From the NCBI RefSeq assembly GCF_003704095.1, contig NW_020845317.1, positions 124,001 through 188,000 of the forward strand: a stretch of DNA of 64,000 nucleotides, read 5' to 3'. This DNA is from Pocillopora damicornis (taxonomy: Eukaryota). The notes under the pieces are model-generated. The model was not told the DNA's origin and ran no database searches. It saw only the letters and a program-made list of their open reading frames with translations. Both the position numbers and the translations under genes were made by a program. Below, one piece after another: positions 19,253-61,194 of this stretch. The number at the start of each line of letters is the position of its first letter. Positions within the stretch are counted from its first letter, which is position 1.

Positions 19253-20959
19253 TCAAGCAACAGAGGCCAAATGTTTCATGCAAATCTTGATCCTCAACAA
19301 CTTTGATCGTTGTTGTTCTTCATACCGTTCCTTTTTTGACTGGCTGTTCAGTCCAGTCCATTCCTTACTTTCGTCGGATGGAAAAGCGCGTGTCAAGAAC
19401 TGACCTATGGCGCTCTTGATAACCAACTCCGGCGTTTGACTCATCATACGAACGGGTTTGCGGCCGGGAAGTTCGTCCTCATTTTTGGCTGCGACTTTTG
19501 AGTACATCAAGAGGAATTCTCGAAACATGTTCACTTGAGCTAAGGTTTTGGCTTCGTCTCTCTTACGCACAATTTCGGGACATGACATCGCGGAGACTTT
19601 GCGCAAGATTTTTCGACTGGTTAAGTTTGGAACGTAACCCTTTGCGGTAGCTGGTCGAATGACTCTTGTCTCGTCCGTTTGCAAATCGACCTTGCGCCTT
19701 CTCAAAATTGGAGAGCTCAAGGTTCTCTGCGTCATTTGTGATACTGAACTTGTGCATGATCTTGCGGACGAAATACGCCTTGCAGATATTATTCCTTGCT
19801 CTTGGCGTGAGATTTTTCGAGAGCGTGTTCGATTTTGTCTTGAAGTTATTGGACCTTGGCATCTATCTACGCCCGAGGCAAACGTTGCTGCGTTCATTAC
19901 TCTCTCTTGATTTACGGAAACTTTACGAGGAGTCGCCGATTTCACACTTCGGATTTCGCTGTTGTCCCCGACCTCTGCAACACTTACGCTTTCAGGTACT
20001 TGTTCTTCTTCGTATTTGTCAGCTTTCTCTTCAAGCGACTCGCCTATTTTGGGTTCAACATTAACCATTTCGTATCCTGATTCAGACTTGACAAATCTAA
20101 CACTACTTTTTCTTCTTTTAATGATATTTTGTAGTGACTCTTTTAACTGTGGATCAGTAAATTGATTCAATACTTCCTTTTCATCGCACGAAATCTCTTC
20201 GGGAAGCATTTTTCGCTCGCCCACTCCACTATTTTCTGGATCTGAGCAAGTACTTAAAAATATCTCTTCATTGCAATTGGACATTTCGAATTCTATATTT
20301 GATCTACGCTCGCTGTCACTTTGTTCTCTTGAGCTTAAGTTTTCTGATACGTAAGCTTTCGACTGAGAATTCTTTCTGATAATCATGTCAGAATTATCCT
20401 TACAACTGTTATCAATTGAAATAAGCGGAGTGGAAGTGGTCGTGTATCGGCTATAAACACTCGGCTTATTTTTTTGTGGGCGATTCAGCGTTGTGTGTTT
20501 TTTAGTGTTTAATGGAGTCTCTCGCGGTTCCTCCCTACAGTACTTTTTGTCTCTGTCAATTCTCTTGCTTCCTACTCCAGATACAACACTCGACATTTTA
20601 CCCGCAGAACATCCAAGCCTTCCTGCATCTGGTTTCTTTGACGTTAATTGACTATTCCTGTCACCAGTCTTGTGGCCTTCGATTTTCAACTGGCTTTGCA
20701 AACTTTTGCGCATAAAATTCATTTCATGAATTACTCCACGAGGGTCCTTTTTCGCTCCTGATGAAAAGACGTTATGTGTGTTTCCAACCTGGTTTAATGC
20801 CTCCAAAATGGCTGCTTTCTTCGCGGTGTTTGCAATCATCTTTTCACGGGCTAAGTTTAATCTGCCCACAACATTTCCCAATGTAATATTTTCATCCTGC
20901 AATTTACACTTTGAAGTGTTGGCAGGCCTTGGCTTCGTTTCCTTACCGTGTGATGTCAT
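19253..20959 (-). CDS. Uncharacterised basic, largely disordered protein (568 aa) with CCDC190-like N-terminal helix
   Basis: 1.7-kb ATG-initiated ORF, K/R/S/E-rich, many R[RK]xS sites. Helix at aa 27-58 aligns with those of ORFs 23585 and 59881. Confidence 0.85.
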   Translation of the reverse strand: MTSHGKETKPRPANTSKCKLQDENITLGNVVGRLNLAREKMIANTAKKAAILEALNQVGNTHNVFSSGAKKDPRGVIHEMNFMRKSLQSQLKIEGHKTGDRNSQLTSKKPDAGRLGCSAGKMSSVVSGVGSKRIDRDKKYCREEPRETPLNTKKHTTLNRPQKNKPSVYSRYTTTSTPLISIDNSCKDNSDMIIRKNSQSKAYVSENLSSREQSDSERRSNIEFEMSNCNEEIFLSTCSDPENSGVGERKMLPEEISCDEKEVLNQFTDPQLKESLQNIIKRRKSSVRFVKSESGYEMVNVEPKIGESLEEKADKYEEEQVPESVSVAEVGDNSEIRSVKSATPRKVSVNQERVMNAATFASGVDRCQGPITSRQNRTRSRKISRQEQGIISARRISSARSCTSSVSQMTQRTLSSPILRRRKVDLQTDETRVIRPATAKGYVPNLTSRKILRKVSAMSCPEIVRKRDEAKTLAQVNMFREFLLMYSKVAAKNEDELPGRKPVRMMSQTPELVIKSAIGQFLTRAFPSDESKEWTGLNSQSKKERYEEQQRSKLLRIKICMKHLASVA

Positions 20960-21548
20960 GATTTCCAGGAATTGAAATGGTTGAAGAGATTCTTTCGTAA
21001 ACAGGACTGTTATTTGGAAATATTTATCATTGCCGTCTCGAGACTGAGTGTTAACTCTTTACTTTTCAAATTGTGTCAACCAACATTGATCTCAATCGAT
21101 AAGTTCAGGTGTTGTAATTGAATGGTTTTTCTTTGTTGTCAGCTTTTACGTCGGTTGCTATACGCTTTGGAAAGGCATAGCAACTAATCTACATCGGCGC
21201 TGCAATTATCAAAACGCTTCCTTTTCAAACCAACGTAAATTCCTGACTCGAAAAACCGGATCTTAATCAAAGCTGCACGATTTCCCAGTCGTTACGTCTA
21301 CGATAAATATTCAATGGCGAAGGAGTTGATGTAAAATTAGCTTCGCCCTTAAAGTGTTTCATCTAATTGAAGCTCATTTGCACTGTTTTTCTCTCGAACC
21401 GAAGATTAAGTCATTCAATTGTTCAGACATCGGACGGTTGTTTTCGTCTTTAATGCCTTTGTTATATATTTGCATTATTGGACAATGTGATTTTAGCATC
21501 GACGCCTTGAATGCTTTGTTTTCGCCCCAATTCTGGTTGAAAAGCTAT

Positions 21549-22570
21549 TTACAGATGTTGAAACTTAGCATTGTTATAAACAGTTTTTATATACGCACTT
21601 GATCTTGCTTTTGAAAGTCTGTTTGAGAAGCTACTTTGCCTGCACTCATGGTTTGTGAAAATGCACGAGATTTTGACTGAATACGGCCCAAAGAAATTGC
21701 TTTTGACAAGTTTTTTGAAAAGTGATTTACAAGGTGTAACCGTTAAATAAACAATCGCAGTAATGACAACAACAAAGGTGTCTTCGTCAGAGCAAATGGA
21801 CTGACTTTTATTAATTTTCTTTTCAGTGACGTATGCCGATAAAAGTCGAAATAGCTCAGCAGTTTTCAAAATGGAGACTCTCCCAATTAATCCGTAAACT
21901 TTTTCAAAGTTAATCAGTTCATATTTTCTCAATGCCCTCTCAATTGACAATAATAATAACACAGTCTATGTTCTCGGGTCCTTATATGTTTTGGGCCCTT
22001 CTTAGAGCTCATTTTAACCTCCGCCTAACGGCTCGGGGTATGATGACTCTGTGTCGGGAGGGTACACTCAAAACATGTTTATGCCCGCGAGCATAAACTC
22101 TCTCGTTTTATTACCTATAATTATAAATACCATAAATATTACCTTCGAGGACTAGTTGTTTACGATATTGAAATGATGAGCCCCTCGGATTTTGGTCCGA
22201 ATTTTCATTAAGCTCTCTTCTATTTGAAGAAATGCGGTACTTGTCGTTAGAACGATGCTCTGGACTTTTCATAAACTTGGATTTTAGAGCAGAACTGATC
22301 AAACCACGAAGCACGATTAACTTTTTATCAGAAAGCTTTCATCACGATAAATTTTCACTACATGTGATTGATCTAGCTCTTTGCCACACATGGCAAAGCA
22401 TGCGAACGGCAATCAGGAGGCTTGGGTTCGAATCGTCAATCGGGTTACTTTCATTTCGTTTCGTCACAAACGAATTTACATCTCTCCTCACGGCCAAGTC
22501 GTGTTCCTTGTTTAATGAGCGGACACTCGTGGCTGACAATTCTGTCTCCTTTATCCAGAAGTTTCAATAA
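21549..22570 (-). pseudogene. Possible decayed ORF interrupted by a repeat
   Basis: ORFs 22342-22539 and 22111-22314 are in the same frame, separated only by TGA-TGA. A further 137-codon ORF (21549-21962) follows a ~160-bp repeat-like insert. Confidence 0.3.
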
Positions 22571-22696
22571 CTTTTTCCATAAGCGGCTACCGATTTTGTT
22601 ATAGGCGGCGGTGCAATCAGGCGAAACCCAAACACGGTACTGAGAGGCCTTACAGTCGGCGGTAGATTGCTGGTAAAGCTGGTGTTTCCTACTTTA

Positions 22697-22862
22697 ATAA
22701 CCCTTCGTTGGCCCTTTGTCCAACGAAGGGCCAAAGCTAGAAATGTCAGATTTGTAAACTCTTACGGTGGCAAATTTACATTATCAACTCAGTTGAGAGA
22801 ACTAAATTATATTGCAATCACCGACACAGCACCACAGTTTCTTTAGAAACTTGCCCCTTTAT
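22697..22862 (+). mobile_element. Family C repeat, right arm with degenerate hammerhead
   Basis: cgaagggccaaagctagaaatgtcag...ttatcaactcagttga...cacagtttctttagaaacttgccccttt. Confidence 0.65.
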
Positions 22863-22870
22863 CTAGTAAT

Positions 22871-23052
22871 GGCGTAGCTCACCATAGAGTTATCTATAGC
22901 ACAGTGGCAGAGCATTGGGGTGCCAAGGCCGAAGATTTAAGGTTCAATTCCACGTGAGAAACTCGGAAATTTTCTTGTCTCAGGTCCGTGTCAAAAAAAG
23001 TTTGCTTTCTCTTTTCGAAGATCGTGCTTAAAATTTTTCAATCTTTCTTATC
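22871..23052 (+). mobile_element. tRNA-derived SINE (degenerate)
   Basis: Pol III A-box TAGCACAGTGG (22897-22907) and B-box GGTTCAATTCC (22941-22951) at tRNA spacing; no clean cloverleaf; non-tRNA tail. Confidence 0.65.
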
Positions 23053-23584
23053 CCAGTGTTCAACAGATTTGGCCAAAATAGGTTCGAAAAGATCTTAGGA
23101 CGCAATCAACCGCAATGACCATCTTGCAAATTGTAAATAAACTGAGAAGTTTAAAGTTGTAGTTAAGTGTTTTGAAATGCCAACTTTTCCCTTTGTAAGA
23201 AACTGCCTCTTATTTACCCGTTACCTCGCTTGAGAACTAATGAATTGCTTCCGTTCTGTACAAGGCACTTTATTAACTGTCCAAGCCCTTTTGTTCGGAG
23301 AGCTTTGTACAAACAATAGTCGAAAAACCTCCAGAGTGATGCGTGTCAAGTTATGCAAACACGACTCACCATGTGTTTGTTTTCCGTGTGCCGTAGTAAC
23401 GAGGAGTAAACAGTTTTTTACAATTTAGCAGTGGCTTTTAGAACTGGAGGAATATAGCTAACCTCAGTTTCTTCCTAAATTAAGGAATCTTTTGATCTAA
23501 GCTCGGTTGGAGTGGAAACTTTTCAAGATTCGTGTTACAGGCGTGTTTTAATTAATTGTTATTTCGCGTAGTTTGGTTTAAAAA

Positions 23585-24817
23585 ATGTCATTTGACTTGC
23601 CGCAGTTTCAGCAAACTTTTGGGGAACAAGTGCGTGAAATACGAGAGCCCAGTGAATGGATGGATCTTAAAAGCCGAGTTGAAGAGGAGAAATTCCGAAA
23701 ATTAAGCGCCGACTTGGAAAGAAGACGAGTTCGAAGGTCTGTCTATTATGCCGAGGAAGAGAAAAGAGTTCTCAGGGAACTTGACAACTTACAGAGAGAC
23801 CAATATCGATTTGAGCGCGAAAAACAACTCCGACTGAGGAATTCAATCTCGTCCTTGTACGAAAAAGGGCATCCGGCGAACGGATCGCCAACAGAAGTTA
23901 ATACTCAACTACCAATGGACCGAAAAGCATTTGGTGGGTCGGCGTCTCTTGCATTTGATCCTGCCGTTGAGAAGAAATCGCTTTCTGCTAGAAAAGCAAG
24001 TAAAGAACATACTGTGAGTTACAGCGCGACGGGAAAGGTATCAAAAAATTACTCATCGTTCAACAGGTTTCCTTTTATCGAGGAAGGAGATGTACAGCAA
24101 TTTCACAAGTGCTGCAAGTCTGCTGCGAAGATCGAGTGTCGGCGATGGGGAGAGGCTTGGTTTTATGCTAAAAATGAGCAAGAGGTATTTGTGGATAGCA
24201 GAAAACGGTGGACTGCTGTTTTACTGAAATCCGAAAGAGAAAGAATGGAAATTTTAAGTAAAAAAGGTGCGGCATTGATGGATTCTGGAACAGGCGTAAA
24301 AACCCACTGTGTCGGTGATGAAACAAAAATTTATGGAGATACTGGGACGGAAAGCGACACTAAAAAAAGACAAGGAAGTCTACCTCCTAGTTTTGAAGCG
24401 AGGAAAGAACAAAGTTATGACAAGAATAGAAGCGTAGAAATCAAGGGAAACAAAACATTAAACTTTTATGAAGCTTTTAGTCTTCCACAAGCACACGCGT
24501 TCAACACTGGAGAGAGTTCCGTTGACGAGACAACGCGAAACACAGACAAGTCGATCTCTGAGGATTGTCAAGAAGTTAACATCAATTCGCTGCAACTGAT
24601 TGCAGGGGAAAAAGTGGTAAAATGGGCGAAGAAAAGTCGAAGTGTTTCTTCTGAGGAGAATAGGAAAAAATTAAAGGAAACCTCAGTGATTCCGATGCCT
24701 GCTATTCACGAACTTGTTACAGAGGGAAAAAATTCAATTTCAGGAGAAAGTTCTAAAACCCTTCCCCGACGTAAACGAACCTTCTGTTTTTTGCCAAAGG
24801 TAACGAGGGAAACATGA
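23585..24817 (+). CDS. Uncharacterised disordered protein (410 aa) with CCDC190-like N-terminal coiled coil
   Basis: aaaaATG start; acceptor-like ttcgcgtag at 23570; helix KFRKLSADLERRR...EEKRVLRELDNLQ. Confidence 0.85.
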   Translation: MSFDLPQFQQTFGEQVREIREPSEWMDLKSRVEEEKFRKLSADLERRRVRRSVYYAEEEKRVLRELDNLQRDQYRFEREKQLRLRNSISSLYEKGHPANGSPTEVNTQLPMDRKAFGGSASLAFDPAVEKKSLSARKASKEHTVSYSATGKVSKNYSSFNRFPFIEEGDVQQFHKCCKSAAKIECRRWGEAWFYAKNEQEVFVDSRKRWTAVLLKSERERMEILSKKGAALMDSGTGVKTHCVGDETKIYGDTGTESDTKKRQGSLPPSFEARKEQSYDKNRSVEIKGNKTLNFYEAFSLPQAHAFNTGESSVDETTRNTDKSISEDCQEVNINSLQLIAGEKVVKWAKKSRSVSSEENRKKLKETSVIPMPAIHELVTEGKNSISGESSKTLPRRKRTFCFLPKVTRET

Positions 24818-25418
24818 AGTTTAAACTTCTTGAAAAAGGCGTTTGATTTTCCCGGCTATTTTATTTATATTTTGAAAACTCTGAGACATTTCAGTGGTCT
24901 AACTGACAATTAAAAAACTTGACTGGCGTGTTTCGGGCGTACAAAGGAGTTATGACTGTATTCTTGGCTTTTATCTTTCTTTCGCTTATTGATAGATACA
25001 GGTCAATTGATAGCTAACAGCAGCACAAAATAAATGGGAAAATTTCCAAATATCTAAAAAGTTATCTGTGTGCGTCACAAAATTTAATGACATCGATGAA
25101 AATAAATATTTTTGTCGGAACTTACATAAGAAAGGGGTGGGTTTTAGTGCAAAGTTAATTGAAATAAGTTTTTTCCCTAAGGTAATGTTTCTGTCAGTTT
25201 CGTGCTGGTTTGTTTGTTATTTATTTAGCGCTTTATTTCGGCAGTTCACTTACAGATGTAAACGAAGCGCATGTTAAGACACCTATTAACTTTCCATTCT
25301 TTTCAGTTTTTTTGAAGTCTTTTCAGGCTTCAAATTTTAATTAAAGATTTACATGCCTGGTTCGTAATGTATCTTGACGACGCACAGTTATTTTTATAGC
25401 TGAAATTAAGAGACGAAA

Positions 25419-25740
25419 ATGGTACTTGAAATTCTGAAATTAGTTGTCGGAAGAAAAGAAACTGAATTGTTTAAAAGCACCTGCCACAGAGGGGGGCAAA
25501 AAAAGAAGAATAATCAACGTTTCCCAGTTCAAACTGAAGCAAGCTCCGAGTTTGCTAGAGAACTCGTTTGTGTACCGAGCCATAAACGTGGTTCCTGCTC
25601 ATTTAGGGCATATAAATCGTGCAAACTGCTAGGATCACTGGCAGAGCACGCACCTGAAACTGAAATCGGAAAAACGTGGAATCTGTCTAAATCACACACC
25701 TGCCACTGAAATCGGTAAAACGTTGAATTTTGTCTAGAGC
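25419..25740 (+). pseudogene. Frameshifted ORF relic with an internal repeated peptide
   Basis: The peptides APATEGGK, APETEIGK and TPATEIGK do not share one reading frame; 46-nt tandem duplication at 25651/25697. Confidence 0.35.
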
Positions 25741-28604
25741 TTGCTAATATTTGGGTGTGCATATCATTAACAAGACCACGTTCAGTTCAGCGAGCCAAGT
25801 GAGGCAGTGGTGCCATTCTAGACAAACTTTAAACTTTAAGGGAAAGGAAAGTAAGAATAAATGCAAAACAAAACAATCAGCTACTGAAGTAACTGATTAA
25901 ACGAAGAAGTGCGTCAAAATTCGTGTGTGAGTAATTTAGGCGGAATGTGGTTCTTCTTTTCCACCTCGCAAGGACATGAGCGTCGAATTTCTAGCATGCA
26001 GTCAGACCTACTCTCTTCATTTAAACATTTTATTTGGCGAAGTAAGGTTCGAACCCTATTTCTCGATCAAATTTGCCGTGCCAAGTCTTAACTCAGGGAT
26101 AAAATGACAAATATAGCTCACTTTTCTAACTGAGATTTTGACCAAATCTTACGTTGCCACAGCAAGAAGTTAAATTATTTTACTTTGCCTTGTTATAAAT
26201 GAGTTTATGTATTTTCATTTTCAAAGTGCACGATGCAAGTGTTAAAAATCGATTGTAACCAATTTGAAAAAGGTTTAAATGGGCGTTTTCTATAAAGAAA
26301 GATGAGGATTTAGGAAATTATCCTAACACATCACTCTCTTTAATTCAGCAAAAGGAAAACAAGACTTAAAATAATTTTTGCTTTCCATCAGGGATTGTTA
26401 TGATAATTAGTTTTCTGCACTGGTGGCGCGATAAAAGTTTGTTTACGTCGATGATAGATTTCGGTGCATTAATTTTTTCCATATGCATGGCCTTGTTCCC
26501 TTAAGGCGGAATATGGCAATTATTTTATTTTGGTTCTATCTTTACACTTAATTTTTGGCAATTCTCTATGTGAAAAAGCCTTTTGGTTGTTGTCCTACCT
26601 TTGAACCAATCATTTAAATTAATGTTCCGAAACTCTGATATAAAAACAAATCTCAATTTACGTATTTTCTTCAGACTGTCATTTCTTTACCGGAGCACAT
26701 ATTGATGTATTCTTACTGTGCTTATAGCTCATGTTCCTCACAGCTACTATAGACTTAAGTGACGTTTGCGTTCAATTTGGCTTCGTCGAAAGAGATTATG
26801 ATCTGGAGGCTGTTCAGCTTGATATGAATATTTCGATAGGTGGTAACTTAAATTGGTCATTTGCCGTCGATGATTGATGTTAAGATAATAATGTTCATTG
26901 AAACAGCTGTTCTTGCGGTTTGTTTCACGAACTGTTTCAACGACACTCTTTGCGGTGACTTTCCGCATCCACGTGTCCTTACACACATATCCGTGTGGAT
27001 CCGTGGAACGTTCTGAATCAGCGTGAACGTGCGTTACTGGAAAAAGCGTTGAACGTAATACGAACCTCACACAATACAGGGAATGTTACGGTTTGTTTAA
27101 TTATCGCCTAGGGCGGGTTGAATAAAGCATTCCAACCACAAACCAATCAGATTCTAGAAAGTGCGGAGAAAATGGGGAGGTCGCGAAATTCAAATACGTG
27201 CTATGAGTGGTACGAGATGTTAAAGACAGTGTGAGTAGCGTTCTGAAAGCGCTCTACAAAGATTAGCTTTTTTTAATATTGTGAACGCATTGCAGCAAAA
27301 ATAGACTACCGAGCTAATTGTTTAAGTATCTTTAACGTCAAGTGGTAAATTTTGAGTACACAGAAAATATATCAAATAAGAAAATTAAAGAGATTCTATG
27401 ATCAGTTTTACCTGATAATAAGCTGAACTATTTCCTTTAAGATATTGGACTTTTCGAATTAAGTTTCTTATCAAAAATATCGTATTTTTGTTGAGCTTTT
27501 TGAATTATTTTACTTTGAAAACGTTGAAATTTCAAAATAGCCCGAGAATTTAAGCGCCATTCGTTTAAATATACCATGGTTTTAGCTTGAAGCATTTCAA
27601 AGGGGTTTATTGTGATATTGTTGTGACTTGTTTGGATAAAAAACAAAATGAACCAAATACATTAAATATGATTTTTCATTTATTTTCATTTTAAGTTGCT
27701 ACGGGCGTATTTTTGCATTCATATACCTCTCTTATGAAATTTTCTGTAGCCCTTTTGTAAGTTTCTCATGTAAATATTTTAGTCCTCCCCGCTAAAATGT
27801 AAGAAAAGTTTTTAATGGCGCACGCTGACTGCGTTGAAGCGCCGAGCTGGACCAGCTTACAGATTAAAGTTTCTGTCTCGCTTTCAATCTTTGTTGTTTC
27901 GCGGTTGTCATAATAATGAGAGGCATTAAATTGTTCTTCAGCGACAGGGGAGGTTGCAGTTGTTTCCTGCAGAGTTCCACCTTTGTCGTGATTGTGAATT
28001 AATTTGTGATATCTCATCTAAAGCGGACCAAAGTGAAAAAGCTTATTTTTCTCAATATCCGCCAGAATGCCTACCGGCACAGGCGAAAGTATCCGCATTT
28101 GACTCTCCTTTTAATTGTAACCTCTAGCGAGCCGAAACTGTCTGGGTTATCTCCTATAAACTTTATTTGCTTTGGAAATAACAAAAATAATTACGAACTG
28201 CGGGATATAGAGGTTGTACCCAGAAATTACAATTTTTTGAATCACGAGCGTTTGGTTTGTAAAACTTGTCACATCGAGAAAAAGAATCTTAGCTAATTGA
28301 AGACATGGTCCTTTTTTTTTATGTATTGCCATCTCTGGCTTCCGAAATATTTTAAGTTTAGCTTTAGAGGCTATATTGATTCTTAAATGTACTAGCGAGA
28401 CGGTTTTTCTGAACTTTTTTCGACATCAGACTTGGCGTTAGTTCACTTTCCAATCCGAATCTGTGTCCTCCACTATGTCAATATATTCGCTTGCTCATGA
28501 TAGTTTGTCACCAGGTTAAAAGGAGGCAAAGTGAAACCAACCCTAAAATCATTCCGTTTGCATGGTGTCTGCTCCATGATTAAGAGAACCGCATTTTGCA
28601 TCTT

Positions 28605-29270
28605 TTAATTGATGTAAGAAGCGTAGACTCGCTCTGCGTTTACCTTATCTTCGTCACTATCATAACATTCGCTTTGGCTACATGAAGTTCTGGATGCAAA
28701 TTCTTGATCATTTTTAAAGTCATCTTCGTTTTCTAATGGAGTTGGATTTGTCGGTCTTTCCAAAGCGTCCTCAGTCGCCGAAAAAATCAACTCGTTACAT
28801 TCCCCCGTGCTTCTCGAGCGGATGCGCGGGTTCGTTTCCGTGCTACTGCTACGACTCGGAGCTACACGTCCGTACGACGCGCGTGGCCTCTCGCGATCTC
28901 GAGGCCGAGCGATTTTTGGCGTGCTGTATATGTCTGGAACTTTTGGCTTGCCGCCGAGTGATGCAGGTTCCTCGAGCGCACGACATTCCTTTCCTTTCAA
29001 AAGCGTCGGCCTGCTCAGAACAATGTCGTCCCCCGGCCTGTGTTTTCGCTGGCTCCTGTGTGGGTCAAATTGATCCAAAGAATCCAGCATTTTGCCATTC
29101 AGTGGAGGGAGTCTTTTCAGCTTGTCACTGTTAATATTCAGAACCGGATTTGCTGGAGTTTTAAGCAGTCTTTCTTGCTCAATAATCAGCCTTAACACTG
29201 CAGTTGATTCTTCGTCATTAAATTTGCTCCGCGGTGGAATTCTACGATAGTTATCAGTTGTATTTTCCAT
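28605..29270 (-). CDS. Uncharacterised disordered protein (221 aa), probable paralog of ORF 39772
   Basis: aaggATGG start; probable 5'UTR intron (donor after 29897, acceptor before 29331); shares three motifs with 39772. Confidence 0.8.
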   Translation of the reverse strand: MENTTDNYRRIPPRSKFNDEESTAVLRLIIEQERLLKTPANPVLNINSDKLKRLPPLNGKMLDSLDQFDPHRSQRKHRPGDDIVLSRPTLLKGKECRALEEPASLGGKPKVPDIYSTPKIARPRDRERPRASYGRVAPSRSSSTETNPRIRSRSTGECNELIFSATEDALERPTNPTPLENEDDFKNDQEFASRTSCSQSECYDSDEDKVNAERVYASYIN

Positions 29271-30130: not shown

Positions 30131-30144
30131 GTAACCATAGCGAC
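30131..30144. promoter_or_regulatory. RFX X-box-like site upstream of ORF 28605
   Basis: GTAACCATAGCGAC, ~235 bp upstream of the putative 5'UTR exon donor at 29897. Confidence 0.4.
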
Positions 30145-39771: not shown

Positions 39772-40302
39772 ATGGAGAGCGCAAAGATTCCCATGCGAGG
39801 TAAAGTTAAAGATGCCGAAGCTGAGGCATTGCTAAAATTGCTTCGACGAGAAAAGGAGTTTAATGATCGGTTCTCGGCGCCGCAAATTCATCAGAGGACT
39901 CCTTTACCCGCAATAGGAGGCAGTGGTAACAACACCGAGACACAACAAATTACAAGTTGCGACAGAACAGATGGAGCATTCCTGACACAAACATTTGAGA
40001 ATGAAACTGGCTTCTCCAATTCCGACATTGGGCATAGCAAGGAGTTGGTTAATGACTCAAAATATTTATGGTCATCAAAACCAGACGTGAACAGTAATTC
40101 TCAACCTCCTTCGTCTTCAAAAGAGTTCTACATTCCCCCGTTCACGTGGAAAGGAGAGCAAAGTTCGTGCTACTCCAAACACGAACGACAAAGACATGGA
40201 CGAACTTTGCCACCCCATGAAATACCCGTTAGTCCCTATTCTTACCTTCCCGAACGTCCCTCGTGTCCTAGACCAGAATCACCGAAGTTCTGTGAGGATT
40301 AA
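39772..40302 (+). CDS. Uncharacterised disordered protein (176 aa), probable paralog of ORF 28605
   Basis: gtcATGG start (first ATG of the tracked ORF); IPxRxKxxDxExxAxLxL, LPAI and ERPxxPxP motifs. Confidence 0.78.
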   Translation: MESAKIPMRGKVKDAEAEALLKLLRREKEFNDRFSAPQIHQRTPLPAIGGSGNNTETQQITSCDRTDGAFLTQTFENETGFSNSDIGHSKELVNDSKYLWSSKPDVNSNSQPPSSSKEFYIPPFTWKGEQSSCYSKHERQRHGRTLPPHEIPVSPYSYLPERPSCPRPESPKFCED

Positions 40303-43009: not shown

Positions 43010-43046
<37 letters not shown>

Positions 43047-47200: not shown

Positions 47201-47293
47201 ATTTCAGCAAAAAATATTAGCGTCAAACGTGTCAAAAATTCGCTTGCAAGACTGCCTTAGGTGATTCCTTTATCGAACTGGCGTGGCGTGATC

Positions 47294-50279: not shown

Positions 50280-50462
50280 GTGCAGTATGTATGAATCATA
50301 CATGAAGCAGGTGACGAGAAAATAAATACTTATCAGGAAAGGGGTGCACTGTTACCTCAGTGTCATACAAATTCTCTCCACTGATTTGCAAGGAATCGAA
50401 GTGTATAGCAATTATCAGAGAGAGTTACGAATTTGATCTCGGGATCCGAAGAAAAGGGTCAA
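50280..50462. mobile_element. Degenerate MITE family B copy abutting the stop codon of ORF 50459
   Basis: caaattctc...gcaagga...gagagtt...gatctcggga...aaagggtcaa resembles 7815-7992. Confidence 0.45.
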
Positions 50463-51058
50463 ATAACCATTGGTATCCTCTTATGAATTGTTATCTTCCA
50501 TCGTTGTTTTGATGTTCCAGGCAAATCCGATTTTGTTCTCCTTAAGCCCGGACGGCATTTAATTTTTCTCACCGCCTTATCGTCTGGGCGTGAGGACGGT
50601 GCCGCTTTAAAGCTTGGCGCGGACTCTTTAGCATCGCTGATATCTCGCAAACTTTTGGCCAATTCTTGCAAACTCAAATTTGCACGTTTGGTAAACAATG
50701 GTTCCTTTATCGAAGGTGTGGGGGGATGCATTGTTGATTCCATTTTAAAAGCTGTTGATGATTGTTGTCTCTGTGAGTGTAGTGTAGGGTTGTAAATACT
50801 CGGTAGCGACTTACACCTCGTCAGACCGTTAAACGAGAAAAACTTGCGCCGCTCGGCGAGTTCGTGTTCCATTCTCTGGTAGGTCCTAAGCGGATTTGGC
50901 TTGTCATCGTCTATCGGAGTTTCCAACTCTTTTCGCAGCTTTGCCTCTTGGAGGTAGATCGAGAACAGTTCTTTCTTTGTCTGAAACGAAGTTTCTGAAG
51001 GCATTTGTGTCGTTCTCGAAGGAGCATTACGAGCCTCCACGAAAATGCTAGGAATCAT
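50459..51058 (-). CDS. Uncharacterised basic disordered protein (199 aa)
   Basis: ATG-initiated ORF with the same composition as its neighbours; RCKSLPSI and LRRTKSDLP motifs; short helix YLQEAKLRKELE. Confidence 0.72.
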   Translation of the reverse strand: MIPSIFVEARNAPSRTTQMPSETSFQTKKELFSIYLQEAKLRKELETPIDDDKPNPLRTYQRMEHELAERRKFFSFNGLTRCKSLPSIYNPTLHSQRQQSSTAFKMESTMHPPTPSIKEPLFTKRANLSLQELAKSLRDISDAKESAPSFKAAPSSRPDDKAVRKIKCRPGLRRTKSDLPGTSKQRWKITIHKRIPMVI

Positions 51059-52026: not shown

Positions 52027-52270
52027 AGGGCGCCGTTCAATTGAATGTTGTAAAACCAAAACCAATGGAAGTCACAACAGCCAATCAGAAGAGAGGAAAA
52101 TGTAAACAGCTAAAAGCCTTCAACCGCGGGAAAGCGCTAGTTACCAGTCGCGATGGGTTTCAGTTTTGAATCTGATTGGTTGATAAAGTGAAGCGAGTTT
52201 TCTGAACCAATTTTATTTAGCGAAGAAAAGCAAAACCAAATTAATCTTGGATTACTTTTGACACTGAAAA
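52027..52270. repeat. Interspersed repeat (ccaatcaga / tctgattgg type)
   Basis: Recalled as a common coral repeat; internal inverted motif ccaatcaga...tctgattgg; related fragment near 46408-46510. Confidence 0.4.
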
Positions 52271-53087: not shown

Positions 53088-53277
53088 TTCTCATTCCTCA
53101 GTCCTCAATCCTCTTCTTACATTTCCCATTCCCCACTCCCCACTCCCCATTCTCCAGTCCCCATTCCTCATTGTCCCCATTCCTCATTGTCCCCATTCCT
53201 CATTGTCCCCATTCCACATTTTCCCCACTCCTCGTTATCCATTACCCAGTCCCCGATCCTCATTCACGCTTTTAGTA
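53088..53277 (+). repeat. Degenerate 7-bp tandem repeat (TCCCCAT/TCCTCAT) with three 16-bp higher-order units
   Basis: tccccattcctcattg x3 within a longer degenerate array. Confidence 0.85.
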
Positions 53278-55597: not shown

Positions 55598-56167
55598 TTA
55601 ATGGTGGTAAGTTGCAACTGTCAGTGACACGCTCATACTTTCTGATTCCTCGGCAATTCGCCGTTTACTGTGCCTCGTATGCATTTTTTTCTTCCATTGC
55701 TCTTTCTCTGTGTTCGTTGTAGCGTTCAGGTGGTTATTGTCTTTTAAGCCTACTGACGGCTTAACACATTGAGTCACACGCATCTTGGCATTCGCATCAT
55801 CGGACGAGAAGCAGTGTGGCGAAGGTCTTTTAGGACGATTTGTTTTTGATTTGTTTCTACGTTTCCTTTTCTTATCGCTCGATAACGGGTCGCTTGTAGC
55901 AACTAACTGAACTTTTCCACCATTTATCTGCGGTAATTTAGTAGAAACGTCCTTGTTTTTCTGCGAGTTTCGGAGTATTTCTGTCATACTCAGAGGGAGT
56001 TGACTGGAGGGGCTTAATTCAGGTAGACGAAGAGATTCTTCAACCAGTTCTTCGAAAGTTTTCCCAGCTTTCGTTTTAGTATTCTGTTTGATGTCCATCG
56101 TCGACAGCCCAGGTCTTGTGTGCTCTGAATTTAACCTCACGATGTACTCTTGTTCTTTGCCAAGCAT
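55598..56167 (-). CDS. Uncharacterised basic disordered protein (~189 aa from first ATG)
   Basis: ORF open from 56254, first ATG at 56167; LPQINGGK motif; NLS-like KKRKRRNK. Confidence 0.62.
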   Translation of the reverse strand: MLGKEQEYIVRLNSEHTRPGLSTMDIKQNTKTKAGKTFEELVEESLRLPELSPSSQLPLSMTEILRNSQKNKDVSTKLPQINGGKVQLVATSDPLSSDKKRKRRNKSKTNRPKRPSPHCFSSDDANAKMRVTQCVKPSVGLKDNNHLNATTNTEKEQWKKKMHTRHSKRRIAEESESMSVSLTVATYHH

Positions 56168-56522
56168 TGAATGTACACCGACGCTGCTCTCTGAAGCGTA
56201 AAACTTGGTGGGGCGGTATATATGCAATGTAACTTGTCCCCAAAATGTTTGCACGGTAGAGCGAAATCAAATTGTCAATCTTGACAAATAGATCGCAGTT
56301 TTGTGGCACAGAGAACGCTGTTTATCAGCCCATAAAATAAATCTGGTCGTCTTCTAAGCGACGATTGGAGTGATAGTTTTTACAATGGCTAAGACGCGCT
56401 AGGATAGTTTCCTCTCTAAAGTGAGCTTACGAGCCGAAACCAAACACCACAAAGAATTTTATGAATTACAATTATTCAGTATTATGATAGTCAACATCTC
56501 TTGCCTCTGACCTCTACATGAC

Positions 56523-57943: not shown

Positions 57944-59880
57944 TTAACAAAAAAATAAAAGGATCCAGTATGTCATTTTCACTTTTCAAAGAGATTTTGA
58001 ATTCTCTTTGGTTTCGTATCCACTTGCAGCGGCCCTTAAAGGCCCTGAAGACAACAGCTAGCAACAGTAACTTTAGGAGGGAAAAGCAGTCACCTTTGCC
58101 AAGTGGTAATCTCATTGACCTCGATCGTAGAAAACAGTTGACACGATTATATTATATAGGAGTGCGTTGAAGAGAGAAAACTTAATGAAGCGAAATACGA
58201 TCACAGAGAAGCTGATCCCAGAGAAAGAGAGAAACAGATTGTTTTATGGGCATCTGTCCAGCTTTCTTGCCCATGCTCTTATACTAGTCTAAATGTGTTC
58301 GTTTGGTTATTTAGCTTGAGGAAAGTGGCTCTTGCGATGTAACTGAGACCAGAATGTAGCGGAGTTGTCCTTCTTGGCCACAATTATTATGTTGATAGGC
58401 AACTACTAGCTTCTGTTACCCAGATAAGATGGTTGTGTATTTAACGATAGCTGATGATAGTTCTACCCTCCGGCAACTAGCTACGCAGCCAATGGCTGAA
58501 AAACCTGAGGACATGTCAATCATCACCATATATTGTAACGAATGTAAAATCCAAAGAAAATGATTTAACAGAGACTCGGCGTAAATTTTGTCATCCCTTT
58601 GCCTCAGTCTGATGAAAGTATTCTTGATATTATTTTTTTTTTCCTTGAAAAAAAAATAATGATAGACGCTTAAAGCTTCAGTAAATCTGGCGTTATTTAT
58701 GTTACTGATTTAGATTAATGAGACCGTCGTCTGCTACTATATTTGAATATTTATGTCTGGTTTTGACCGGAGCTAAGGATCAAGTACTTTAGAGAACTTT
58801 CTCTTTTCTCCAGAGGAAAGTGTAAACTATATGCCTGAATTAACATCTGTCACCACTAAACAGGATACTGCCCAGTCATTGCAAGAGCGCTATCTCTTTA
58901 ACACTACCGCTGCCTAAAACTGCGACAAGCGTTAATCCCAAAATCCAAAATCACAATTGAGCCATTCCATTCATGTTTTGAAATTGTGAAACAGATTACG
59001 TTTAAATCTCTTTAGAGTGAGAGACTTAGAGGCATTTTCTATCAAGCGAAAATAAGGTGATCATTGCTTTTCCTTCAATGAATTCAATCCGGACATATAC
59101 ACAGTGCATAATTAAAAAAAAATAAAATAAAAAGACAAGAAAAAAAGAAACCGTCGGAACGGAGATTTTAAGTCAGCAAGCACTCATTAGGCTATTAGGG
59201 ATCTTAAGCAAACCACGACGGCGACNNNNNNNNNNNNNNNNNNNNNNNNNNNNNNNNNNNNNNNNNNNNNNNNNNNNNNNNNNNNNNNNNNNNNNNNNNN
59301 NNNNNNNNNNNNNNNNNNNNNNNNNTAAAGTGTTTTTTCTAGTTACTTGTATCAACGTTCAAATTCCCTTTGTTCTCGCATCATTGTACTTGATGTATGG
59401 ACGTAAATAACATGGCTAGCTGACATGCGCAAACTGTCCCTTAAGAGATTCCCGTTAATAACATTACCCTCGCCAAACAATGGTAGTTAATGTGGATGCC
59501 TAATCACCCACGAATATACACAAGGGTGGCGCCTCATGTAATCAATTATGTTTACACATTAAGTTATTGTCGACGATAAAGCTTGTGGAAGACACTACAG
59601 TTCATCAAATGCTGAGCATCGCAGATTAGTAACTTCAGTAGGGAAATAGGTGTTCAATAAAGTTTGCCAGGGGAAAGCTGCTTTTGACGAAGAGAGCTAG
59701 ATCAATGCTGGCAATGAAAAATATCCAACGATTTGAGCAAATAGCTAATAACTTGTCAAAACAAATGCCCAAGCAACATAATGGATAATACTTTTGTTAA
59801 TTGCATGCAAATTGTTAGCGCTATGGAAAAGGTTTCAAAAAGTAAACAGATTTGGAAGCCTGCAGATTTAACTGTCTAGC

Positions 59881-61194
59881 ATGCACAAGAAAAACAGTCT
59901 GCACAGAAATACAAGCTCCATGCGGATTGCTCGAGCAGCCCAGGTGCGTCTAGACGAGATAAGCGACAAAATAGAGCGAGACAAACAGAAAAGCATCAAA
60001 TCAAATTATCATGAGAAAGTTAAAATATGGAATGAGCTCAAATCGATTCATCGCGTGTTCGAACCACTCTACGTTATCAAAGAAAATCAAGCAAAACTTG
60101 CAAGAAACCAGCCTGATCTCTCAAAACTGGACTCAAAAAATCGTGCGCATGAAAGCGATGGGATGCGAAAAGATGGGACTGTGTCTTTAAAATACCAGCC
60201 TAGATTGTTGCAAAGAGCTGAAACTCAGAGTAACGTGACAAAACCAAGACGAAGACATACTGAACCCAAAATAGAAGCATTGGAGGGATGGAAAGCCAAA
60301 CCCGTTAACTCCACGAGTCAGGATACTGCAGCGGGTTCCACGCAGTTTAAGTGGAGGTCGCAGAGTTGGTCTTTCCAAGGGTCGTCGAAAATCGAGGCAG
60401 AATGCCCACGTTTGGCACTACCTCAGAGAACCGAGAGAGAACACAATTCCAAACTCCGCAGCGCTTCAGAGGAGCCTCGCATTTCTAACTCAATGTGCAC
60501 AATCGCATTGGGATATATGGCTTTCAAACGCGTTTTGAAAAACAAGAAATTGTCCCAAGGATTGGAACCCAAAGTTGTTGATTCCAGATTCAGGTCGATG
60601 TCAATGCATGAGACAGAACTCAGTGCAAACTCGCGGCTGGTCATGCCTGAACACTCAGAGGCAATTAATGAAAAAGAGGACACTTTGAAATTACTATTTC
60701 CAGCCACAGAGAAAACTGTTAATCCACACTTAATTAAAAAAGATAACAATGGGCGAAAACCCAATTCTAAAAGGCGTGCTTCGACTTGCGTCAACAATAG
60801 ACGACAACTTATTTCATCGCTATCCTGGCCGTTAGGCGAGTTACCTGTGAACCCTACAGGAGTGCAGAAAAGCTTATTAAGCCCTGATCATATTCCAAAT
60901 GCACACAGCCCAAATGTCTCTCGCTCACGCTCTGAGATGTCTGTCAGAAGTTTGCCACAAGCATTGAAAACGGAACGAGTTAAAACGGGGAAAGCTTCTG
61001 GCTCAACTGAACAGGAGCACTCAAGCGAGAGTGACGAAGAAATCAAGTTCGGAACATTTCATGAATATTTTGGTGAAAAACCCATGCATAGCTGGCTGAA
61101 GAAACCGCTTAAACGAGGGTCAAAATTGCTAAAACCAGTGGGAAGTGGTTGTTTTAGTGAAAGTTTTCAGGCTTTAACTCACAGCAAAACATGA
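59881..61194 (+). CDS. Uncharacterised basic disordered protein (437 aa) with CCDC190-like N-terminal helix
   Basis: 1.3-kb ATG ORF; ARAAQVRLDEISDKIERDKQKSIKSNYHEKVKIWNELKSI helix; many RxxS sites. Confidence 0.85.
   Translation: MHKKNSLHRNTSSMRIARAAQVRLDEISDKIERDKQKSIKSNYHEKVKIWNELKSIHRVFEPLYVIKENQAKLARNQPDLSKLDSKNRAHESDGMRKDGTVSLKYQPRLLQRAETQSNVTKPRRRHTEPKIEALEGWKAKPVNSTSQDTAAGSTQFKWRSQSWSFQGSSKIEAECPRLALPQRTEREHNSKLRSASEEPRISNSMCTIALGYMAFKRVLKNKKLSQGLEPKVVDSRFRSMSMHETELSANSRLVMPEHSEAINEKEDTLKLLFPATEKTVNPHLIKKDNNGRKPNSKRRASTCVNNRRQLISSLSWPLGELPVNPTGVQKSLLSPDHIPNAHSPNVSRSRSEMSVRSLPQALKTERVKTGKASGSTEQEHSSESDEEIKFGTFHEYFGEKPMHSWLKKPLKRGSKLLKPVGSGCFSESFQALTHSKT

What the first reader, a model, noticed from the sequence alone, without database searches (positions are those of the whole stretch)
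19253..61194. 42-kb cluster of uninterrupted ORFs for basic disordered proteins in two motif-defined subfamilies, with decayed copies: candidate undescribed gene system
Seen: seven intact ORFs of 176-568 aa (19253-, 23585+, 28605-, 39772+, 50459-, 55598-, 59881+). None has a coding intron or a recognisable globular domain, and all are K/R/S/E-rich. I found no conserved multi-exon gene between them, whereas AIDA and GALM nearby have 8+ exons. Three share one N-terminal helix and two share another signature. Several decayed ORFs of similar composition lie in between. Inference: an old, fast-evolving cluster under birth-and-death that keeps only a helix and short linear motifs, plausibly cilia/sperm-flagellar scaffolds or phosphatase adaptors.
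Basis: partly seen in the sequence, partly recalled or inferred. Interest (0 to 1): 0.75.

Follow-up and report, generated by a model that had tools for sequence, protein, structure and literature searches.

The report
Coral array of intronless disordered-protein genes
The seven ORFs are real coral genes for floppy, domain-less proteins, part of an old eleven-gene array in which only some members are detectably related, and their function is still unknown.

Summary
All seven ORFs exist and are far longer than chance allows (7 stop-free segments of 170 aa or more vs 0.25 expected). No assembly gap touches them, and each is already in NCBI as an uncharacterised single-exon protein. A, C, D, E and G have full-length relatives in other stony corals, and C also in sea anemones. 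RNA-run contigs cover A and B without splicing.

Inside the window the "two subfamilies" claim holds only in part. C and D share an N-terminal module (hhalign 28.7 vs 13.0±2.5 in shuffles). A, B and G show no significant link to each other. No decayed copies were found.

The rest of the contig changed the picture. Four more such genes (H1-H4) lie just right of the window, making 11 in 72 kb and none elsewhere on the 270-kb contig. Through them B (with H1/H4) and G (with H2) join one N-terminal-helix family. A, E, F and H3 stay unlinked.

A basic [LF]PxI/L motif and R[RK]x[ST] kinase sites are enriched. PP1, PP2A and calcineurin docking motifs and an RFX X-box are not.

My best reading is an old, hyper-diverged tandem array of motif-bearing disordered proteins. 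Unchecked notes from this scan report similar clusters on other contigs of this genome.

The parts
19253..20959 (-). Gene A: 568 aa in a single coding exon. Basic (pI 9.8), low hydropathy. Residues about 480-568 and a 'DPQLKESLQNIIKRR..SVRF' stretch are nearly invariant across relatives.
   Evidence: 105 relatives, 29-100% identity, mostly full length, including Stylophora and Porites evermanni; invariant columns; single copy in its own genome; exact sequence in NCBI.
19228..21257 (-). Extent of the unspliced RNA-run contig over gene A. The same left end, 19228, appears in two studies.
   Evidence: X1 record 1 is 2,033 letters, collinear over 19228-21257. X6 records 24 and 25 cover 19228-21168. 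There are no joints. X1 and X6 are RNA only by the tool's guess.
20960..23584 (.). 2.6-kb spacer between the divergently oriented genes A and B. It holds a dispersed repeat of about 125 bp at 22740-22862.
   Evidence: orientation; only short, low-depth contigs, plus a very deep element at about 22819-22852; at least 1,415 first-look candidates for the repeat in the genome.
23585..24817 (+). Gene B: 410 aa in a single coding exon, pI 9.3. Residues about 34-89 (window about 23684-23851) form the N-terminal helix module shared with H1/H4, which lie outside the window.
   Evidence: X1 and X6 contigs run collinearly from 23429/23413 to beyond 24999; exact sequence in NCBI; the P. verrucosa orthologue is named 'uncharacterized protein LOC131796633'. 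H1+H4 profile vs B scores 40.5, and 0 of 50 shuffles reach it.
26750..27085 (-). Open segment with a marginal match to one stretch of the G-family model. It could be a relic or chance.
   Evidence: 13.7 bits, model positions 261-326. E=0.0016 over 1,161 window segments and 0.0084 over 6,102 contig segments. No collinear partner fragments.
28605..29270 (-). Gene C: 221 aa, pI 6.8. The N-terminal module (residues 1 to about 60, window about 29091-29270) is shared with D. It has invariant motifs such as PPRSKFNDEE..., LPP and PK.
   Evidence: 40 relatives, including Desmophyllum, Actinia and Nematostella; invariant columns; single copy; in NCBI; the P. verrucosa orthologue is LOC131796648.
39772..40302 (+). 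Gene D: 176 aa, pI 6.5. A remote paralogue of C through the N-terminal module (residues 1 to about 50, window 39772 to about 39921).
   Evidence: 7 representatives at 38-63% identity, full length; alignment. C vs D profile score 28.7, E=0.0016; column shuffles give 13.0±2.5 and 0 of 200 reach it; exact sequence in NCBI.
50459..51058 (-). Gene E: 199 aa, pI 10.2. It has a conserved core (about residues 28-90) and a conserved C-terminal +R[LI]Px[IV]I end.
   Evidence: 7 metagenome loci at 54-65% identity; 5 intact, 1 runs off its contig, 1 frameshifted; dN/dS 0.40-0.63 at dS 0.17-0.31; exact sequence in NCBI.
55598..56167 (-). Gene F: 189 aa from its first ATG. The 218-aa form needs a GTG start. 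pI 10.0.
   Evidence: the 189-aa form is in NCBI, and close relatives are 97-99% identical.
59881..61194 (+). Gene G: 437 aa, pI 10.0. The N-terminal helix module (about residues 6-56, window about 59896-60048) and a 'GY.AFK+.L.K' motif are shared with H2, which lies outside the window.
   Evidence: 48 relatives, including Desmophyllum, Porites evermanni and Oculina; invariant columns. G-family profile vs H2 scores 40.1 and 0 of 50 shuffles reach it; two collinear matches; in NCBI.
61195..64000 (.). Right edge of the window. The array continues beyond it on the same contig. The form accepts only window coordinates, so the four further members are given here by contig position: H1 G000:C1952:202617-203333(-) 239 aa; H2 205420-206769(+) 450 aa; H3 209350-210162(-) 271 aa; H4 214846-215571(-) 242 aa. 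Subtract 124000 to continue the window's numbering.
   Evidence: ORFs and composition. H1-H4 about 1e-28, B-H4 about 1e-6, B-H1 about 2e-5, G-H2 about 3e-4.. ORF evidence only: neither transcription nor orthologues of H1-H4 were examined. Within 61195-64000 itself, the Pfam sweep gave no hit attributable to this stretch (searches place GALM and AIDA on the left).

Best explanation
The seven ORFs are seven separate protein-coding genes, each with a single coding exon. They form the left two thirds of an array of eleven such genes spread over 72 kb (window 19.3 kb to about 27.6 kb past the window's right end). A P450 gene and a PAN-domain exon interrupt the array.

The proteins are low in hydropathy, rich in K, R, S and E, probably largely disordered, and without any known domain.

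The array is old within Hexacorallia and is not a set of recent duplicates. There are no DNA repeats, and neighbouring members are 30% identical at most. Detectable kinship is patchy:
- Group I (B, G, H1, H2, H4) shares an N-terminal helix module of about 50 residues.
- Group II (C, D) shares a different N-terminal module.
- A, E, F and H3 stand alone.

Inferred origin: ancient tandem duplication of intronless genes followed by extreme divergence. Selection kept only a helix, a few short linear motifs (notably a basic [LF]P-x-[IL] motif) and clusters of R[RK]x[ST] phosphorylation sites.

Inferred, not shown, mode of action: motif-bearing disordered adaptors or kinase substrates that dock to partners through the helix and the short motifs.
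For: Real genes:
- ORF lengths are far beyond chance.
- All seven exact products are in NCBI/UniRef.
- RNA-run contigs are collinear over A and B.
- E is under purifying selection.

Old and linked:
- Full-length relatives of A (105), G (48), C (40, including Nematostella and Actinia), D (7 representatives) and E (7 loci).
- Relatives sit on contigs of identical length, which I take to be the same contig. 3,230,351: A, C, G and a second G copy. 3,044,463: A, C, G and a second G copy. 342,438: A, C, D. 272,442 (Porites evermanni): A, G. 254,664: C, G and a second G copy. 664,925: A, G.

Array:
- 11 of the 21 ORFs of 160 aa or more on the 269.7-kb contig are low-hydropathy, and all 11 lie in one 72.3-kb run. 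Approximate P is 2e-5.

Kinship:
- H1-H4 about 1e-28, B-H4 about 1e-6, G-H2 about 3e-4.
- H1+H4 profile vs B 40.5 and vs H2 25.3; G-family profile vs H2 40.1. In each case 0 of 50 shuffles reach the score.
- C vs D 28.7, with 0 of 200 shuffles.

Motifs:
- [LF]P.[IL] occurs 15 times in 8 of 11 proteins, vs 2.0±1.4 in shuffles (0 of 2,000). It is invariant or conserved in the C, D and E orthologue sets.
- R[RK].[ST] occurs 22 times vs 8.8±3.0 (0 of 1,000).

No domain: Pfam finds nothing for the eleven or for the 79 rows of alignments A1-A3 (78 homologues plus window ORF A, the first row of A3) beyond single chance-level hits.
Against: - A, E, F and H3 have no significant link to any member. A single origin for all eleven is therefore not shown.
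- Groups I and II are not linked.
- G reaches B only through two intermediate steps.
- I defined the [LF]P.[IL] motif after seeing it. The contig's 10 other long ORFs carry it at about half the density (6 in 2,554 aa vs 15 in 3,402 aa).
- H1-H4 rest on ORF evidence alone.
- B and F were not searched beyond their 90%-identity clusters.
- For A, the clearest RNA evidence comes from runs whose RNA nature is the tool's guess. In the two runs on record as polyA RNA, depth over A is like that of the spacer.
- Linkage in other corals is inferred from equal contig lengths, not from gene order.
- Nothing here bears on binding partners, phosphorylation or expression pattern.
Confidence: 0.6

Rival explanations
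1. The neighbours are mostly unrelated lineage-restricted genes. They sit together because the region is a shared regulatory or chromatin domain, for example one that is germline- or stage-specific. Only the small sets B/H1/H4, G/H2 and C/D are local duplicates. The cluster is kept by co-regulation, not by common descent.
For: Four of the eleven genes have no detectable relative in the array. Groups I and II are not linked. Three divergent pairs (A/B, C/D, F/G) could share promoters. Linkage of the unrelated A, C and G is kept in several coral assemblies.
Against: Eleven of eleven low-hydropathy long ORFs on the contig lie in one run and have the same unusual gene structure and composition. 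The [LF]P.[IL] motif recurs across groups and singletons. Relatives as far apart as B and H4 were only just detectable, so kinship lost beyond detection is plausible for the rest.
Confidence: 0.22
2. One reading: the proteins are cilia or sperm-flagellar scaffolds, or phosphatase (PP1/PP2A/calcineurin) adaptors.
For: Basic, disordered, fast-evolving, intronless and clustered genes are typical of sperm-expressed genes in other animals (recalled, not tested). The atlas's second-best look-alike for A is TEX33 / ciliary microtubule inner protein 4, at 0.80. SxIP-like motifs occur 9 times vs 3.6±1.9 expected (14 of 1,000 shuffles). A carries a nearly invariant 'SVRF'.
Against: The tool states that an atlas score of 0.80 is reached by shuffled proteins a third of the time. 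Pfam TEX33 does not match A at E<=1 or any of the 29 rows of A3 (A plus 28 relatives) at E<=0.01. No relative was found among solved structures, which include ciliary doublet cryo-EM models (recalled). RVxF occurs 4 times vs 7.0 expected, LxxIxE 11 vs 7.5, PxIxIT 5 vs 2.4 and LxVP 2 vs 1.9, so none is enriched. The one X-box-like site (52754) lies 1.7 kb upstream of E, and there is none at the other six genes.
Confidence: 0.1
3. The ORFs are not independent protein genes. They are chance ORFs, non-coding transcripts, or exons of larger spliced genes.
For: None has a known domain. Differences among close strains in A and B are as often nonsynonymous as chance predicts. Some close relatives of E read through its stop codon.
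Against: ORF lengths are far beyond chance. Start, stop and length are conserved in relatives down to 29-45% identity. E has dN/dS below 1. RNA-run contigs over A and B are collinear, with no joints. Public annotation gives exactly these products.
Confidence: 0.03
4. They are retrogenes: intronless copies of multi-exon parent genes located elsewhere in the genome.
For: All have a single coding exon.
Against: Six-frame searches of the whole 234-Mb genome with each of the seven proteins, and with the C and G family profiles, found only the gene itself. Orthologues in other corals are single ORFs of the same length.
Confidence: 0.03

Closest known systems
Conserved 'dark' gene families of stony corals (Genome Biol Evol 2026, PMC13044578; abstract and 12 passages read)
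   Same: These are lineage-restricted coral and hexacoral genes with no ascribable function. They are conserved across Scleractinia, and the paper proposes that such genes arise by lineage-specific duplication followed by rapid divergence.
   Different: The passages I read do not mention this locus, intronless arrays or motif-only disordered proteins ('disordered' occurs 0 times in its text). Its lists of families are in supplements, which were closed, so I cannot say whether these genes are among its families.
Other clusters of intronless 'motif-only' disordered-protein genes noted by this scan on other contigs of the same genome (s1-777623, s1-782899, s1-779085, s1-784455, s1-766400)
   Same: The same genome, the same gene structure (small intronless genes), the same composition, kinship visible only through short motifs, and conservation in corals and anemones as those notes describe it.
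   Different: Those are unchecked AI notes about other DNA. The motifs they name (a C-terminal LCSTEL, a PP2A-B56-like site, a CaaX module) are not the ones seen here. Own-genome searches with the seven proteins found no relatives outside this contig, but those searches also missed the true remote relatives H1 and H4.
CCDC190-like N-terminal helix (suggested by scan note s1-775535)
   Same: Group I members begin with a long charged helix followed by a disordered basic tail.
   Different: No Pfam family of any name matched the helix region of B, G, H1, H2 or H4 at E<=1.
TEX33 / ciliary microtubule inner protein 4 (Pfam PF15400)
   Same: It is the language-model look-alike of A at 0.80, and it is a small protein of sperm and cilia.
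   Different: The score is at chance level by the tool's own calibration. There is no Pfam match for A or its 28 aligned relatives.

Membership tests
Tandemly duplicated, lineage-restricted ('dark') gene family | Neighbouring genes are paralogues of one another | tested here: inconclusive
   Met for B/H1/H4/H2/G and for C/D. Not met for A, E, F and H3. So 7 of 11 genes fall into two groups that are not linked to each other.
Tandemly duplicated, lineage-restricted ('dark') gene family | No recognisable domain or annotated function | tested here: met
   Pfam: nothing above cut-off for the 11 proteins or for the 79 rows of alignments A1-A3, i.e. 78 homologues plus window ORF A. PDB sequence and profile searches: nothing below E=0.07. 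Every name a source gives is 'uncharacterized', 'hypothetical' or 'unnamed', except one UniRef label, 'BEN domain-containing', on a shorter Stylophora model.
Tandemly duplicated, lineage-restricted ('dark') gene family | Restricted taxonomic range | tested here: inconclusive
   Every named hit is an anthozoan: Stylophora, Porites, Pocillopora, Desmophyllum, Oculina, Actinia, Nematostella. The word-based search cannot see very distant relatives. Only D went through the exhaustive HMMER search (7 hits).
CCDC190-like proteins | Sequence match of the N-terminal helix to the family | not testable with these tools
   No Pfam family matched that region at E<=1. I did not verify that Pfam-A holds a CCDC190 model, and I had no tool-supplied CCDC190 sequence.
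TEX33 / CIMIP4 (PF15400) | Match to the Pfam model | tested here: not met
   A: 0 families at E<=1. 0 of the 29 rows of A3 (A plus 28 relatives) match it at E<=0.01. The atlas score of 0.80 is at chance level.
PP1 / PP2A-B56 / calcineurin regulatory subunits | Presence and enrichment of the docking motifs (RVxF, LxxIxE, PxIxIT, LxVP; regexes recalled from ELM) | tested here: not met
   Observed vs shuffles: 4 vs 7.0, 11 vs 7.5, 5 vs 2.4 and 2 vs 1.9. None reaches 5%. A's conserved 'SSVRF' fails the strict RVxF spacing (0 matches in A).
RFX-regulated ciliary genes | X-box near the promoter (consensus recalled) | tested here: not met
   One site in 64 kb (52754) vs 0.32 expected. It is 1.7 kb from E's ATG, and there is none near the other six genes.
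Retrogenes | A multi-exon parent gene elsewhere in the genome | tested here: not met
   Own-genome six-frame searches return only the genes themselves.

The most novel reading that the evidence does not exclude
All eleven genes, and perhaps the other 'motif-only' clusters that this scan noted elsewhere in the same genome, descend from one ancestral intronless gene. They would form an anthozoan-wide superfamily of disordered proteins in which selection preserves only an N-terminal amphipathic helix, a basic [LF]P-x-[IL] docking peptide and basophilic-kinase phosphosites. All members would then plug into one shared, still unknown partner, making this a lineage-specific signalling or scaffolding system that ordinary homology searches cannot see.
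Probability: 0.2. Interest if true: 0.7.

Novelty: new member of a known kind. Interest (0 to 1): 0.42.

Why it matters
Reef-coral genomes are full of conserved genes with no known function. This locus shows how one set of them is built. It is an old array of intronless genes whose products have diverged until only a helix, a few short motifs and phosphorylation sites remain, so kinship can only be traced step by step through intermediate paralogues. It also shows that looking only inside a fixed window can hide real relationships: B and G link only through genes outside the window.

If the shared [LF]PxI/L motif and the kinase sites are functional, the array gives concrete peptides to test for partners. 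If the several similar clusters noted in this genome turn out to be related, they would make up a sizeable anthozoan-specific part of the proteome.

As it stands, this is a well-documented example of a known kind of 'dark' gene family. It is not a new type of system.

Tried and rejected
- Pairwise BLASTP among the seven proteins: nothing below E=0.18.
- BLASTP of the seven against the 193 collected homologues: no cross-family hit at E<=0.01.
- tblastn of those 193 against the window: 197 matches, 0 outside A, C and G.
- Own-genome searches for paralogues: each gene found only itself, plus two chance hits at E 0.3-0.5. These searches missed H1 and H4, so they are insensitive to remote kin.
- A model built from the second G-like clade of other corals, searched against the window: only G, plus the marginal 26750-27085 segment.
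- PDB searches: nothing.
- tRNA and Rfam scans of the window: 0 hits.
- Atlas: no usable hit for C, and a chance-level lead for A.
- Literature: 0 papers for six locus names. 0 papers for 'intronless genes' + cnidarian + 'intrinsically disordered'. 0 papers for 'taxonomically restricted genes' + coral + 'intrinsically disordered'. 9 papers for 'single-exon genes' + Pocillopora, of which I read passages of one. My statement that this locus is not described in print rests on these four searches only, and supplements were closed.
- DNA repeats of 60 bp or more in 19000-61500: none.
- Links of E, F, H3 and A to any profile: none significant.
- Link between Groups I and II: none.
- Splice donor at 23981, where contigs from the two polyA runs stop fitting: no GT there, so this stays unexplained.

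Full report
WHAT IS THERE.

The window is G000:C1952:124001-188000, part of a 234-Mb assembly in 4,393 contigs. Named protein hits place it among pocilloporid stony corals. The closest named relatives are from Pocillopora verrucosa and P. meandrina, followed by Stylophora pistillata.

All seven ORFs are present:
- A: 19253-20959(-), 568 aa.
- B: 23585-24817(+), 410 aa.
- C: 28605-29270(-), 221 aa.
- D: 39772-40302(+), 176 aa.
- E: 50459-51058(-), 199 aa.
- F: 55598-56254(-), 218 aa if it starts at GTG. From its first ATG it is 189 aa (55598-56167).
- G: 59881-61194(+), 437 aa.

The two assembly gaps named by the scan's program (49682-50060 and 59226-59325) lie outside every ORF. The 156-aa 'ORF' at 49614-50084 is only N read as X. 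I could not test continuity across the gaps and did not fill them.

The 42-kb region holds 7 stop-free segments of 170 aa or more where 0.25 are expected, and 6 of 200 aa or more where 0.02 are expected, in 100 first-order Markov simulations.

ARE THEY GENES?

All seven exact translations (F as the 189-aa form) are held by NCBI/UniRef. Public annotation therefore already models each one as a complete product of a single coding exon. Named orthologues are simply 'uncharacterized protein' (P. verrucosa LOC131796633 for B and LOC131796648 for C).

I laid contigs of four runs from three studies on 19000-24999.
- A is covered by one collinear 2,033-letter contig (19228-21257) in X1. Two contigs with the same left end cover it in X6.
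- B is covered collinearly from 23413/23429 to beyond 24999.
- No joint falls inside either ORF.

Caveats on the RNA evidence:
- These are assembled contigs.
- X1 and X6 are RNA only by the tool's guess.
- In the two runs on record as polyA RNA (X5, X10), depth over A is like that of the spacer. Only B's first 400 bases stand out.

Conservation:
- A has 105 relatives at 29-100% identity, mostly full length.
- G has 48 relatives.
- C has 40, reaching Actinia and Nematostella.
- D has 7 representatives at 38-63% identity in the exhaustive HMMER search.
- E has 7 metagenome loci at 54-65% identity. Five are intact, one runs off its contig and one is frameshifted.
- E's dN/dS is 0.40-0.63 for the pairs with dS 0.17-0.31.

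Among close strains, the differences listed are 13 nonsynonymous to 4 synonymous in A and 10 to 5 in B, against an expected nonsynonymous fraction of 0.74. These are 32 of the 40 rows shown; 72 further rows were not shown. The ORFs are therefore old but evolve fast.

WHAT THE PROTEINS LOOK LIKE.

No Pfam family passes its cut-off. The same holds for the 79 rows of alignments A1-A3 (78 homologues plus window ORF A), apart from single chance-level hits. All seven proteins fall on the disordered side of the charge-hydropathy line, whereas the FASTK-like control ORF in the same window falls on the folded side. Five are basic (pI 9.3-10.2). C and D are near neutral (6.8 and 6.5).

Conservation within each family is concentrated in short blocks:
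- C keeps an invariant N-terminal stretch (PPRSKFNDEE... and the helix after it), plus LPP, PTL, PK and RP blocks.
- A keeps a 'DPQLKESLQNIIKRR..SVRF' block and a nearly invariant last 90 residues.
- G keeps an N-terminal helix and a 'GY.AFKR' block.

THE SUBFAMILY CLAIMS, INSIDE THE WINDOW.

- All-against-all BLASTP gives nothing below E=0.18.
- A vs G family profiles: E=0.61.
- A profile vs B: E=0.79.
- G profile vs B: E=0.12, and 9 of 100 shuffles of B reach that score.

The claimed three-member helix subfamily is therefore not supported by the window alone.

C and D are different. Their profile-profile comparison gives E=0.0016 and a score of 28.7 over 50 columns. Column shuffles of the D alignment give 13.0±2.5, and 0 of 200 reach 28.7. 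The reversed alignment gives 16.9, and unrelated family profiles give 11.5-17.4. The invariant positions of the two families coincide (P.R.K..D.E..A.L.L, then an LP motif), and a later RPS.P.P block aligns in the global alignment. C and D are most likely remote paralogues.

DECAYED COPIES.

I found no decayed copies.
- 193 homologues searched by tblastn hit only A, C and G.
- Family models searched against 1,161 window segments and 6,102 contig segments hit only the genes themselves.
- The one exception is a 13.7-bit match of the G model at 26750-27085(-), which has no collinear partners.
- The region has no DNA repeats of 60 bp or more.

THE SURROUNDINGS.

A Pfam sweep of every other open segment of 45 aa or more between the genes gave 0 hits in 278 at E<=0.001. 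The same sweep of the flanks gave 8 hits in 148: GALM, AIDA and a FAST_1 domain. GALM lies at about 12.8-14.6 kb and AIDA at about 3.4-4.0 kb, both to the left of the cluster. The cluster is therefore not nested in an intron of either gene.

BEYOND THE WINDOW.

I read the rest of the 269.7-kb contig, and this changed my reading. Of the 21 ATG-to-stop ORFs of 160 aa or more on the contig, 11 have low hydropathy and the same K/R/S-rich make-up. All 11 lie in one 72.3-kb run, C1952:143256-215571, with an approximate P of 2e-5. They are the seven window genes plus four more just past the window's right edge:
- H1: C1952:202617-203333(-), 239 aa.
- H2: 205420-206769(+), 450 aa.
- H3: 209350-210162(-), 271 aa.
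- H4: 214846-215571(-), 242 aa.

A cytochrome P450 gene and a PAN-domain exon lie between G and H1.

Links found with the four new genes:
- H1 and H4 are plain paralogues (phmmer about 1e-28).
- B matches H4 (about 1e-6) and H1 (about 2e-5).
- G matches H2 (about 3e-4).
- The H1+H4 profile against B scores 40.5, with shuffles at 13.8±2.7 and 0 of 50 reaching it.
- The H1+H4 profile against H2 scores 25.3, with 0 of 50 shuffles reaching it.
- The G-family profile against H2 scores 40.1, with shuffles at 15.3±2.5 and 0 of 50 reaching it.
- H2 also matches the G model collinearly at the 'GY.AFK' block.
- B, H1 and H4 align collinearly beyond the helix: a ΦPxI motif, a Cys, a Trp, and a C-terminal LPK[IV]/FPKF.

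By these steps B, H1, H4, H2 and G form one family defined by an N-terminal helix of about 50 residues (alignment).

Comparisons that were not significant:
- The G profile against H1 (2 of 50 shuffles reach it) and against H4.
- The H1+H4 profile against G, F, E, A, C, D and H3.
- The C family against H1 and H4.
- The E family against all other members.

A, E, F and H3 therefore remain singletons, and the two groups are not linked. H1-H4 have no Pfam family. For them I have ORF evidence only.

TURNOVER AND LINKAGE.

In other corals the G family has a second clade. The tree has 29 rows and the clades carry starred support. Both copies sit on contigs of the same length: 3,230,351, 3,044,463 and 254,664. 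This genome has only G. That is a gene loss, or possibly a gap in the assembly.

Relatives of A, C, D and G fall on contigs of identical length in several assemblies. I read these as the same contigs, and so as conserved linkage within about 0.25-3.2 Mb.

SHORT MOTIFS.

I defined the motif [LF]P.[IL], usually preceded by K, R or S, after seeing it. It occurs 15 times in 8 of the 11 proteins, against 2.0±1.4 in residue shuffles (0 of 2,000 reach 15). The contig's 10 other long ORFs carry 6 copies in 2,554 aa, about half the density. The motif is invariant in the C and D families and kept in the 5 intact E orthologues.

R[RK].[ST] sites occur 22 times vs 8.8±3.0 expected (0 of 1,000 shuffles reach 22). 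RVxF, LxxIxE, PxIxIT and LxVP are not enriched. SxIP is marginal, at 9 vs 3.6 (14 of 1,000). All of these regexes are recalled from memory.

FUNCTION.

Nothing here shows what the proteins do.
- PDB searches are blank.
- The atlas gives only a chance-level lead, to TEX33/CIMIP4.
- One X-box-like site lies away from the seven promoters.

My commitment is that these are disordered proteins that act through a docking or dimerising helix, short linear motifs and basophilic-kinase phosphosites. That is an inference from what selection has kept, and I hold it at low confidence.

COMPARISON AND NOVELTY.

The genes are annotated but uncharacterised. Four literature searches found no description of them or of such arrays. 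A 2026 paper describes conserved 'dark' gene families of stony corals that arise by lineage-specific duplication and divergence (PMC13044578; abstract and passages read).

Unchecked notes of this scan report several similar clusters of intronless motif-only genes on other contigs of this genome. The kind of thing has therefore been seen before by the scan on other DNA.

I file this locus as a new member of a known kind. It is of moderate interest, mainly as a clean example of paralogy that can be traced only through intermediates, and as a source of testable motifs.

Noticed in passing
beyond the window: G000:C1952:202617-215571 (loci L019, L020): Four further intronless, K/R/S-rich ORFs (H1 239 aa, H2 450 aa, H3 271 aa, H4 242 aa) continue the array to the right of the window. 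H1, H2 and H4 supply the links that join B and G into one family.
   Followed up: yes
window 22740-22862: A dispersed repeat of about 125 bp sits in the A/B spacer. It has at least 1,415 first-look candidates in the genome, and 39 of the 40 scored places elsewhere are about 78-85% identical. Its core (about 22819-22852) is extremely deep in all four RNA-run assemblies (summed depth about 9,000-28,000). It is followed by a tRNA-like stretch that ARAGORN and Rfam do not call.
   Followed up: partly
window 23981: In both runs on record as polyA RNA (X5, X10), a contig at depth about 28-32 covers 23195/23290-23981 and then continues for about 32 letters that do not fit the window. The rest of ORF B is at depth 0.7-6 in those runs. 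There is no GT at that position. It could be a strain indel, an assembly break or an alternative 3' end.
   Followed up: partly
window 10220-11923 (+): A 567-aa intronless ORF matches Pfam FAST_1 (E=7e-7, 29.5 bits against a cut-off of 27.4) and nothing else at E<=0.01. It is a FASTK-like protein without a detected FAST_2 or RAP domain. This bears on scan note s1-775491.
   Followed up: partly
homologues of G on contigs of 3,230,351, 3,044,463 and 254,664 bases: Other corals carry two G-like genes on one contig, in separate well-supported clades. This genome has one.
   Followed up: yes
window 50459 (stop codon of E) and locus L017: Some close relatives of E read past the stop, giving 233 aa instead of 199. 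Others have N-terminal extensions (220 and 226 aa). One metagenome copy (L017) is frameshifted.
   Followed up: partly
Listing of cluster members output: E and F were listed together as one '90% cluster' of 507 members. BLASTP shows each listed member matches either E or F, never both, so the listing merges two clusters.
   Followed up: yes
window 24868: A 16-base insertion relative to the window appears in the X1 and X6 contigs, just downstream of B's stop codon. It is probably a 3'UTR polymorphism.
   Followed up: no
window 52912-53364 (+): A 150-aa ORF of low complexity, rich in proline and built of repeated 'PIPHSP'-like units. It is not K/R-rich like the seven and matches no family model.
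   Followed up: no
window 52754 (+): The single X-box-like site in the window (0.32 expected). It lies 1.7 kb upstream of E's ATG.
   Followed up: no
G000:C1952:83285-83419 and G000:C1291:566198-567081: Further Aida_C2 matches outside the window, pointing to AIDA-like paralogues or exons elsewhere on this contig and on another.
   Followed up: no
beyond the window: C1952:196793-201256 and 191860-192360: A multi-exon cytochrome P450 gene (Pfam E=1.6e-47 and 1.2e-14) and a PAN-domain exon lie between G and H1, interrupting the array.
   Followed up: yes
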